DNA of 64,000 nt, from assembly GCA_053919585.1 (NCBI GenBank), contig CM132784.1; one strand, 5' to 3'. Positions 52,901 through 54,107 of this stretch are shown here, one piece after another. The first letter of the stretch is position 1, and each line of letters begins with the position of its first letter. The DNA comes from Euprymna scolopes (taxonomy: Eukaryota). The notes below the pieces were generated by a model that saw only the letters and a list, made by a program, of their open reading frames with translations, did not search any database and was not told where the DNA came from. A program made the translations under genes and the position numbers.

Positions 52901-53934
52901 ATGAGCTTGGCAGACAGATTGGAACATATGAAATTGATTTATACCTATTTCGAAAATATATAAACCCTATACTTATCGATAGATTTAACAGCTCGTGTTC
53001 AATTTATTGTATGCAACGAATCGATTACAATAATCACTGTGATTTGACATGAAATAATGACAAATGTGTTGATATGCTGTAAAATAGATACACTGAAACA
53101 ATTAATCGAACGTAATATTTATTTTGTTTTTGGTATTAAATAATAACATAGGTTTGATATGCCGTAAGGCATACAGGCAACGTCGTATTATGGGAAGTTT
53201 CACGGACGTTTACCATGTTCGAATGTAATGAAGTTGGGTATATTTCATTTTATTCCTCGTGCAGCTGTGCGGACAAAGATGGCGAATAGAAGTTAAGAGT
53301 AACTTCAGTTTGGAGTTCGGATCCTGCGACCAATGGTACAGTTATACATAGCCACAATGANNNNNNNNNNNNNNNNNNNNNNNNNNNNNNNNNNNNNNNN
53401 NNNNNNNNNNNNNNNNNNNNNNNNNNNNNNNNNNNNNNNNNNNNNNNNNNNNNNNNNNNNNNNNNNNNNNNNNNNNNNNNNNNNNNNNNNNNNNNNATGA
53501 AAATATCCTTAGCTCTCTTCAACTAGTATTGGGCCTCTTTAAGAGAGTTATAATATGTTGTCGGCTTTAGCGTAATGTTCCGTCATTTGCTACTGAACAT
53601 TATCTGACTAGTTTTCTGTAGTTGCTCACTTGCCGCAACATTATAAATAGAACATAATTCTCTTTTTTTTTCTTGGTGGCCTGGGGGTAGAATACTGGAC
53701 TGCAGAGTCGAAGTTGACTTTATGACTACGTTTGAATCTTTTAGCCAGTAATAATTATCATTTCCTAAACTAATGATTGCGTAAGTATGAAACATTAGTA
53801 TCTGTAATAAATATACATTAGTACAAGCTCGTTGTTTGTTTGTTTACGAACAGGCGATTTGAGCACTATAAAAGTGGTAGCGGGTGTCTATTTAAATAGA
53901 CATTCCGACGAGTTATTTACGGGCGTCGATTCCA

Positions 53935-53975
53935 TGGTCGAGTGGGAGAACTGCAGACGGTTCTAGGTTCAATCC
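53935..53975 (+). promoter_or_regulatory. Putative Pol III type 2 promoter (A-box and B-box) upstream of the hammerhead
   Basis: TGGTCGAGTGG (53935-53945) and GGTTCAATCC (53966-53975). The 20-nt spacing is shorter than in tRNAs. Confidence 0.5.
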
Positions 53976-53993
53976 TTGGCTTGAGAGAGATGC

Positions 53994-54052
53994 TAGTCTA
54001 GCGGCACTAGTGAGTTGTGATACAACGAAACAGGACTGTATGTCGATGACTA
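53994..54052 (+). ncRNA. Type I hammerhead ribozyme fold with variant core (CUAGUGA)
   Basis: Stem I TAGTC-tag-CGGCA / TGTCG-at-GACTA; core CTAGTGA (54007-54013); stem II GTTG-tgata-CAAC; GAAA (54027-54030); short stem III ACAG-ga-CTGT; cleavage triplet GUA (54038-54040). Confidence 0.75.
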
Positions 54053-54055
54053 CAA

Positions 54056-54107
<52 letters not shown>

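What the first reader, a model, noticed from the sequence alone, without database searches (positions are those of the whole stretch)
53800..54060. Pol III promoter + hammerhead ribozyme + (TA)n: candidate ribozyme-SINE/retrozyme family
Seen: A-box and B-box motifs are followed 18 nt later by a complete type I hammerhead topology. All three stems pair, stem I has an internal loop, and the cleavage triplet is GUA. The unit ends at a (TA)n tract, and a perfect 18-bp palindrome (tgtctatttaaatagaca, 53885-53902) lies upstream. Known: non-autonomous hammerhead retroelements (retrozymes, schistosome SM-alpha) are processed by self-cleavage, and very short stem III forms usually cleave as dimers. Inference: this is a Pol III-transcribed self-cleaving mobile RNA associated with TA microsatellites. 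This copy has CUAGUGA instead of CUGANGA, so it is probably inactive while the family consensus may be active.
Basis: partly seen in the sequence, partly recalled or inferred. Interest (0 to 1): 0.82.

Follow-up and report, generated by a model that had tools for sequence, protein, structure and literature searches.

The report
Dead copy of hammerhead retrozyme repeat
This is a shortened, mutated copy of a 321-base mobile repeat whose better-preserved relatives in the same 5.9-Gb mollusc genome carry a textbook self-cutting hammerhead RNA motif and always sit in (TA)n microsatellites; this kind of element (animal retrozyme, Penelope-associated) is already known.

Summary
Window 53825-54061 plus (TA)n to 54104 is one 5'-truncated copy (unit positions 74-321) of a 321-nt dispersed repeat (about 2,000 first-look candidates, on more than 40 chromosome-scale contigs).

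Other copies read CUGAUGA...GAAA (38 of 41 keep CUGANGA). The window copy alone has CUAGUGA, which swaps two essential core bases, and it also lacks 12 nt between the box motifs.

Sister subfamilies keep the same hammerhead through two compensatory stem changes. A family-independent hammerhead descriptor gives 67 hits in 284 kb of related loci, none in 20 shuffles, and none in the window.

All but one of 29 insertions share the 3' end ...ACAAAUAUAU joined to (TA)n (the other to (CA)n). Their 5' ends vary, and 11 of 29 carry two or three tandem ribozymes. Abundant RT plus GIY-YIG Penelope-like elements in this genome also end in (TA)n.

Best reading: a dead copy of a non-LTR retrozyme, similar to schistosome SMalpha. 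Pol III transcription is not shown: the box motifs have tRNA-like spacing, but tRNA detectors fail and the motifs lie mid-unit. Cleavage and circular RNA are untested.

This is a new member of a known kind. The scan already reported this family on other DNA of the genome.

The parts
53825..54061 (+). 5'-truncated copy (unit positions 74-321) of the 321-nt hammerhead-bearing repeat, about 97% identical to intact copies apart from one 12-nt deletion
53885..53902 (+). 18-bp palindrome; a family feature that forms a hairpin in the predicted monomer fold
   Evidence: Present in all family-1 copies. In other subfamilies it is kept through G-U pairs, 93% of cells paired, but this is not better than shuffles
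53935..53945 (+). A-box-like motif TGGTCGAGTGG
   Evidence: conserved across subfamilies; no tRNA called
53950..53959 (+). Site of a 12-nt deletion (between 53954 and 53955) relative to other copies; it shortens the A-B box spacing from 43 to 31 nt
53966..53975 (+). B-box-like motif GGTTCAATCC within a T-arm-like hairpin
53994..54052 (+). Type I hammerhead domain (stems I, II and III), inactive in this copy
   Evidence: 82.8 bits to the family model R1
54007..54013 (+). Mutated catalytic core CTAGTGA; siblings have CTGATGA (G5 and A6 are swapped)
54040..54041 (+). Predicted self-cleavage site (GUA|U)
   Evidence: Inferred from hammerhead geometry; not tested
54053..54104 (.). Element 3' end CAAATATAT merging into a (TA)n microsatellite, which serves as insertion target and primer site
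54103..54115 (-). Inverted stub TGTAGATGACTA, matching the 12 nt that follow the cleavage site, abutting the other side of the (TA)n
   Evidence: only 2-3 such stubs were seen, so the meaning is open
41788..41851 (-). Second, older hammerhead copy from a different subfamily, abutting (TA)n at 41757-41800
   Evidence: 49.2 bits

Best explanation
Window 53825-54104 is a dead insertion of a 321-nt non-coding retroelement of the animal non-LTR retrozyme type, with a tRNA-like box module as in schistosome SMalpha.

Proposed life cycle:
1. Genomic copies holding two or more units are transcribed.
2. The type I hammerhead in each unit cuts after GUA (inferred).
3. This gives a unit-length, highly self-paired RNA that may be circularised (inferred from the literature).
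4. A reverse transcriptase nicks a (TA)n microsatellite. The most likely source is the RT plus GIY-YIG Penelope-like elements that are abundant here and use the same target.
5. The nicked DNA primes on the element's AUAUAU, 15-20 nt downstream of the cleavage site, and copies one or more turns of the template.
6. The result is insertions with a fixed 3' end, variable 5' ends and partial tandems (this pattern is shown).

The window copy is cut off at unit position 74. It lacks 12 nt between the box motifs and has the two core bases G5 and A6 swapped. It should therefore neither cleave nor give rise to new copies.
For: - Family: 47 matches at 86-97% identity on many contigs, from 2,025 first-look candidates.
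- Core: other copies read CUGAUGA-N13-GAAAC. Of 41 copies, 38 keep CUGANGA and 35 keep the full core spacing.
- Descriptor: a family-independent hammerhead descriptor gives 67 hits in 284 kb of loci and 0 in 20 dinucleotide shuffles of 348 kb.
- Covariation: two stem pairs change on both sides between subfamilies (G-C to C-G in stem I, U-A to C-G in stem II), with 94% of cells paired against 16-48% when partners are slid. Three combinations of these pairs occur in 40 further loci.
- Ends: insertions have a uniform 3' end joined to (TA)n, variable 5' ends, and (TA)n also on the 5' side in at least 12 of 29.
- Tandems: 11 of 29 loci hold 1.2-2.6 units with 2-3 ribozymes.
- Fold: the monomer RNA folds at -103.5 kcal/mol, z = -3.44. 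Unit GC is 44.7%.
- Penelope-like elements: 15,396 first-look GIY-YIG candidates. One ORF carries RVT_1 plus GIY-YIG. 13 of 20 sampled copies end in (TA)n about 520-600 nt after the stop codon.
- RNA: poly(A) RNA-seq assemblies from a mollusc metatranscriptome and invertebrate samples contain the family.
- Literature: PMC7229834 (retrozymes), PMC8557442 (Penelope-like elements inserting into (TA)n), bioRxiv 10.64898/2026.07.22.740005 (retrozymes as Penelope derivatives).
Against: - No cleavage or circular RNA data. The RNA runs are held only as contigs and show no molecule ends.
- Rfam hammerhead models stay far below their gathering score.
- The unit shows no sequence similarity to 20 sampled Penelope-like loci. 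The Penelope link therefore rests on shared target and insertion style only.
- The compensatory changes amount to two events.
- The loci used for one search were chosen by ribozyme score, so they overstate how often the ribozyme is intact.
- 5' ends cluster at unit positions 58-83, which this model does not explain.
Confidence: 0.8

Rival explanations
1. It is a classical tRNA-derived Pol III SINE that happens to carry a hammerhead. It would be copied by a LINE with (TA)n preference or a (TA)n tail, not by Penelope-like elements. The box motifs would drive its transcription.
For: A- and B-box-like motifs are conserved across subfamilies with 43-nt spacing. The only T run of 4 or more lies right after the ribozyme, at the unit junction. 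Schistosome SMalpha is a precedent for a tRNA-like hammerhead SINE (PMC2770079). No sequence link to sampled Penelope-like elements was found.
Against: ARAGORN and the Rfam tRNA model find nothing in 20 or more copies. The boxes lie at unit positions 184-236, not at the 5' end, and copy 5' ends do not cluster upstream of them. (TA)n is also present on the 5' flank, so it is a target and not a tail. Partial tandems and inverted stubs are Penelope-style (PMC8557442). No candidate LINE partner was identified.
Confidence: 0.15
2. It is a satellite-like tandem DNA repeat spread by DNA-level processes, and the hammerhead-like motif has no function.
For: Tandem units of 321 nt exist. There is no direct RNA-level evidence for cleavage.
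Against: Copies are dispersed on more than 40 contigs, mostly as 0.7-2.6 units with a fixed 3' end and truncated 5' ends. The ribozyme is the best-kept segment between subfamilies and shows compensatory changes.
Confidence: 0.04
3. The hammerhead resemblance in the window is a chance motif in AT-rich DNA.
For: The window copy fails Rfam and the generic descriptor, and its fold energy equals that of shuffles.
Against: The same position in sibling copies is a canonical core. The descriptor gives 0 hits in 20 shuffles against 67 in related loci.
Confidence: 0.01

Closest known systems
Metazoan non-LTR retrozymes (Cervera and de la Pena 2020, PMC7229834)
   Same: Type I hammerhead in a short (170-400 nt), low-GC, non-coding unit. 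Found as dimers to multimers and dispersed. Stem III of two pairs plus a tetraloop, as in invertebrate examples. Highly self-paired unit RNA.
   Different: Here most insertions are single or partial units. Arrays of at most 2.6 units were seen. There is a strict (TA)n target and a fixed AUAUAU 3' end, plus a conserved tRNA-like box module. Circular RNA is not shown.
Schistosome SMalpha / Sjalpha SINE-like hammerhead elements (Ferbeyre 1998; PMC2770079, PMC8490949)
   Same: A unit of about 330 nt that combines a tRNA-related module with a type I hammerhead. High copy number, both tandem and dispersed.
   Different: tRNAscan calls SMalpha as tRNA-Gln-like (PMC2770079). Here no tRNA detector fires and the module lies mid-unit. 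Sequence homology to SMalpha was not tested. The host phylum differs.
Penelope-like elements and their pLTR hammerheads; Hydra and Naiad clades inserting into (TA)n (PMC8557442; bioRxiv 10.64898/2026.07.22.740005)
   Same: (TA)n insertion, partial tandem and inverted arrangements, and co-occurrence with abundant RT plus GIY-YIG elements that end in (TA)n in this genome.
   Different: No sequence similarity between the 321-nt unit and the sampled Penelope-like termini. The dominant Penelope-like family here has a hammerhead-like motif with one extra U in the core.
Plant LTR retrozymes (PMC4918200)
   Same: Non-autonomous retroelement with hammerheads, thought to move through self-cleaved circular RNA.
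   Different: The plant elements have type III ribozymes in LTRs, a PBS and PPT, 4-bp target duplications and higher GC. None of these is seen here.

Membership tests
Hammerhead ribozyme, type I | Conserved core CUGANGA ... GAAA, with a cleavable N-U-H triplet | tested here: not met
   The window copy has CUAGUGA (54007-54013), so it fails. In the family, 38 of 41 other copies have CUGANGA and 35 of 41 have the full CUGANGA-N13-GAAAC with GUA.
Hammerhead ribozyme, type I | Three helices around the core, open at helix I | tested here: met
   17 pairs in 4 helices, 94% of cells paired. The generic descriptor passes 67 copies and 0 shuffles.
Hammerhead ribozyme, type I | Helices supported by compensatory changes | tested here: met
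   Two pairs change on both sides between subfamilies, and three combinations are seen. This amounts to only two events.
Hammerhead ribozyme, type I | Reaches the Rfam gathering score | tested here: not met
   No hit in the window at E<=10. None at gathering threshold in 20 loci. Best score is 18.9-22.1 bits against 48.5.
Hammerhead ribozyme, type I | Self-cleavage activity | not testable with these tools
   Needs in vitro transcription of a natural intact copy.
Metazoan non-LTR retrozyme | Type I hammerhead inside short tandem repeats of about 170-400 bp | tested here: met
   The unit is 321 nt. 11 of 29 insertions carry 2-3 ribozymes in tandem. The window copy itself is a single truncated unit.
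Metazoan non-LTR retrozyme | Low GC, no LTR/PBS/PPT, non-coding | tested here: met
   GC is 44.7%. Units abut directly, with no terminal repeats. The unit is too short to encode a protein of its own.
Metazoan non-LTR retrozyme | Expressed as unit-length linear and circular RNA | tested here: inconclusive
   The family is present in poly(A) RNA-seq assemblies. Contigs show no ends, strand or circular junction.
Metazoan non-LTR retrozyme | Highly self-paired unit RNA | tested here: met
   -103.5 kcal/mol, z = -3.44, 0 of 100 shuffles as stable.
SMalpha-like tRNA-derived hammerhead SINE | tRNA-derived module recognisable as tRNA-like | tested here: not met
   ARAGORN finds 0 genes in the window and 19 loci. 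No Rfam tRNA hit at E<=10, even on 111 nt alone.
SMalpha-like tRNA-derived hammerhead SINE | A and B box motifs at tRNA-like spacing | tested here: met
   Boxes start at unit positions 184 and 227, 43 nt apart, in intact copies. Spacing is 31 nt in the window copy because of the deletion.
SMalpha-like tRNA-derived hammerhead SINE | Promoter at the element's 5' end, with copies starting at the transcription start | tested here: not met
   The boxes lie mid-unit. 5' ends cluster at unit positions 58-83 and at the unit junction, not at about 170-180.
Penelope-derived retrozyme (pLTR origin) | Co-occurrence with Penelope-like elements that share the insertion target | tested here: met
   RT plus GIY-YIG ORFs. 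13 of 20 sampled copies end in (TA)n.
Penelope-derived retrozyme (pLTR origin) | Sequence similarity to Penelope-like termini | tested here: not met
   BLAST of the unit against 20 Penelope-like loci gave nothing. Only a small sample of families was covered.

The most novel reading that the evidence does not exclude
The mid-unit tRNA-like module is a working Pol III promoter. Tandem copies would then make self-cleaved, circularised 321-nt RNAs, and a Penelope-type enzyme would copy these into (TA)n by annealing the nicked microsatellite to the element's AUAUAU. The superfamily (several subfamilies, perhaps 10^4-10^5 copies) would be a large part of the 'unclassified' repeats, and a shaper of (TA)n microsatellites, in a genome of a group annotated as almost free of SINEs.
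Probability: 0.3. Interest if true: 0.6.

Novelty: new member of a known kind. Interest (0 to 1): 0.4.

Why it matters
The window copy itself is an ordinary dead repeat. The family behind it is a clean natural example of a canonical hammerhead kept by selection across subfamilies of a mobile element.

It has a fixed priming site next to (TA)n and abundant Penelope-like elements using the same target. That makes the proposed link between retrozymes and Penelope-like elements testable in a mollusc.

I found no paper in the held library that describes hammerhead retroelements in cephalopods or related molluscs. One recent cuttlefish genome paper reports almost no SINEs and about 40% unclassified repeats (PMC13218726). 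Whether this genome is a cephalopod is my inference from its size, its roughly 46 large contigs and a 'mollusc metagenome' run.

Tried and rejected
- Rfam at gathering threshold on the window and 20 loci, and at E<=10 on the window copy and intact copies. Only sub-threshold Hammerhead_3 hits appeared, and (TA)n produced many false miRNA hits.
- tRNA detection with ARAGORN and the Rfam tRNA model, including a 111-nt cut-out. All negative.
- Free-energy folding of the 63-75 nt ribozyme domain. The z-score is near 0 and the best fold mispairs the core, so it is not informative.
- Sequence link to Penelope-like elements. None was found in 20 loci.
- Signature of in vivo cleavage in genomic copies. 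Three of 29 insertions (L010, L015, L017) start 3-5 nt after the predicted cut, and 2-3 inverted 8-13 nt stubs lie next to (TA)n. This is suggestive only, was chosen after looking, and rests on too few cases.
- Covariation in the 18-bp palindrome. It is kept as a hairpin through G-U pairs but is not better than shuffles.
- RNA runs. Only assembled contigs were available, so there is no information on ends, strand or circularity.
- Fetching more genome loci.
- A resemblance of the module to tRNA-Asp(GUC), recalled from memory, could not be tested and is not used.

Full report
**Observation.**
- An A-box-like TGGTCGAGTGG lies at 53935-53945 and a B-box-like GGTTCAATCC at 53966-53975.
- A hammerhead-shaped domain starts 18 nt later, at 53994-54052.
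- Stem I is TAGTC/GACTA and CGGCA/UGUCG around a 3/2 internal loop. Stem II is GUUG-UGAUA-CAAC, followed by GAAA. Stem III is short (ACA/UGU plus a tetraloop).
- The triplet is GUA, with the predicted cut between 54040 and 54041.
- The element then runs CAAATATAT into (TA)n up to 54104. The perfect 18-bp palindrome is at 53885-53902.
- The core reads CTAGTGA at 54007-54013.
- Rfam gives no hammerhead hit for this copy even at E<=10. The only gathering-level hit in the whole window is a 5S rRNA at 56490-56608. ARAGORN finds no tRNA.

**It is a repeat family.**
- A search of the window's own genome (5.9 Gb, 925 contigs) with 53800-54060 gave 2,025 first-look candidates. The 40 that were scored gave 47 matches at 86-97% identity on many chromosome-scale contigs.
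- Homology starts at 53825, so 53800-53824 is flank.
- Aligning copies with their flanks shows a unit of 321 nt. In tandem loci...ACAAATATAT joins directly to TTTAAGCCCCCC... of the next unit.
- The window copy covers unit positions 74-321.
- Compared with intact copies it has a 12-nt deletion between 53954 and 53955, a few substitutions, and the core swap GA to AG.

- In 41 other copies of the ribozyme region, 38 read CUGANGA and 35 have the full CUGAUGA-N13-GAAAC followed by GUA. The window copy is the only one with CUAGUGA.
- G5 and A6 are invariant catalytic-core bases (established hammerhead knowledge), so this copy should be inactive.
- A strict descriptor that owes nothing to this family was applied. 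It requires CUGANGA, a 4-bp stem II, GAAA, a 3-bp stem III including A15.1-U16.1, H17 not G, and a 5-bp stem I.
- It gave 67 hits in 284 kb of related loci, none in 20 dinucleotide shuffles of 348 kb, and none in the window.
- Rfam's curated models do not reach threshold on intact copies (18.9-22.1 bits against 48.5). Free-energy folding of the short domain is uninformative.

**Evidence of selection on the fold.**
- A second, older copy in the window (41788-41851, minus strand, abutting (TA)n at 41757-41800) belongs to another subfamily.
- Between subfamilies, stem I changes CGGCA/UGUCG to CCGCA/UGUGG and stem II changes UUG/CAA to CUG/CAG.
- On a 16-sequence alignment, 94% of cells pair, against 16-48% when partners are slid. 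Two pairs change on both sides.
- Forty more loci, fetched around hits of a covariance model built from that alignment, show three of the four combinations of these two pairs.
- Those loci were chosen by ribozyme score, so they say nothing about how often the ribozyme is intact.
- All 150 scored genome hits of the model reached 83-94 bits. The window holds only the two copies.
- The sequence upstream of the ribozyme is much less alike between subfamilies than the ribozyme itself.

**How copies are inserted.** In 29 independent family-1 insertions:
- The 3' end is always ...GACUACAAAUAUAU, joined to (TA)n, or to (CA)n in one case.
- 5' ends vary, and at least 12 also have (TA)n directly on the 5' side. 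The microsatellite is therefore the target rather than a tail.
- Eleven insertions are 1.2-2.6 units long and hold two or three ribozymes.
- 5' ends are not uniform. Eleven lie at unit positions 58-83, including the window copy. Nine lie at the unit junction or just after the predicted cut.
- Three of those nine (L010, L015, L017) start 3-5 nt downstream of the cut. This hints at run-off on cleaved RNA but rests on too few cases and was noticed after the fact.
- The window's (TA)n is followed by an inverted stub, TAGTCATCTACAT. This is the reverse complement of the 12 nt that follow the cut site.

**Likely partner.**
- The genome holds very many GIY-YIG matches (15,396 first-look candidates), with open frames up to 870 aa.
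- One such frame carries RVT_1 plus a C-terminal GIY-YIG domain, the Penelope-like architecture.
- 13 of 20 sampled copies end in (TA)n about 520-600 nt after the stop codon, some with an extra 28-nt tail.
- Craig et al. (PMC8557442) report (TA)n insertion for the Hydra and Naiad Penelope clades, pseudo-LTR tandems, inverted copies and 30-40-bp tails.
- Li et al. (bioRxiv 10.64898/2026.07.22.740005) argue that animal retrozymes derive from Penelope pLTRs.
- The 321-nt unit shows no sequence similarity to the 20 sampled Penelope-like loci. The link here is therefore shared target and insertion style, not homology.

**Promoter question.**
- In intact copies the two box motifs start 43 nt apart (unit positions 184 and 227). 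This is close to the tRNA-gene spacing (about 44 nt, from general knowledge), and they are conserved across subfamilies.
- The only T run of 4 or more in the unit lies at the unit junction, just after the ribozyme.
- Against this, no tRNA detector fires on any subfamily.
- The module is in the middle of the unit, and 5' ends do not cluster upstream of it.
- Pol III transcription is therefore a reasonable but unproven idea. I put it near 40%.
- Stem III resembles the invertebrate retrozyme type, which PMC7229834 reports as efficient without dimerisation.

**RNA.**
- The unit-length RNA between two cut sites folds at -103.5 kcal/mol, z = -3.44, with stem I closing the molecule.
- The family is present in assemblies of poly(A) RNA-seq runs, including a 'mollusc metagenome' metatranscriptome.
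- Only contigs were available, so there is no information on ends, strand or circularity, and DNA carry-over or host transcripts cannot be excluded.

**Comparison and verdict.**
- The element works like, and fits the tested criteria of, metazoan non-LTR retrozymes (PMC7229834). It is closest in layout to schistosome SMalpha and Sjalpha (PMC2770079, PMC8490949).
- It is a new member of a known kind in a mollusc genome.
- I found no paper in the held library describing such elements in cephalopods.
- Earlier follow-ups of this scan reached the same class for this 321-bp family on other DNA of the genome.
- The window copy itself is a decayed, truncated insertion of no expected activity.

Noticed in passing
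window 56490-56608 (+), extending to about 56710; also L022:1948-2064 (-) and L110:1-91 (-): A 5S rRNA match (72 bits). Its homology to two other loci continues about 100 nt beyond the 5S part at about 79% identity. This points to a 5S-derived SINE family rather than a 5S gene. Both fuller copies start right after AT/TA-rich sequence.
   Followed up: partly
L062-L080 (e.g. L080:1417-3252, minus strand, and about 560 nt downstream): The dominant Penelope-like family (RVT_1 plus GIY-YIG, frames up to about 806-870 aa) ends in (TA)n, with an optional 28-nt tail. Its 3' UTR has a hammerhead-like CUUGAAGA...GCCCG/CGGGC...GAAAC with one extra U in the core in all 14 copies seen.
   Followed up: partly
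L050:1600-1663 (+), L055:2318-2379 (-), and the flanks of L004 and L015: A third hammerhead-bearing repeat with a different stem II (CUGAAGA-AUCC-CGAAA-GGAU-GAAAC), also next to (TA)n.
   Followed up: no
family-1 loci L001-L030 (unit positions 58-83; window 53825): 5' ends of insertions cluster at unit positions 58-83 (11 of 29) with almost none at 5-57. A TATA-like TAAATAAT lies about 28 nt upstream, and a stable hairpin spans unit positions 75-112. The cause is unknown.
   Followed up: partly
window 54103-54115 (-); L021 near 1438 (+): Short inverted stubs of the element's last 8-13 nt lie on the far side of the (TA)n tract. They may be Penelope-style inverted twin insertions or run-off copies of cleaved RNA.
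   Followed up: partly
L005, L008 and L011 flanks: Another short repeat containing ...GGATGAAACGCGGAATATTCAGTGTAGCTTAATC... recurs next to (TA)n tracts.
   Followed up: no
window 42031-42060 and beyond: A run of N (assembly gap or masked stretch) lies about 180 nt from the second hammerhead copy. It was left untouched.
   Followed up: no
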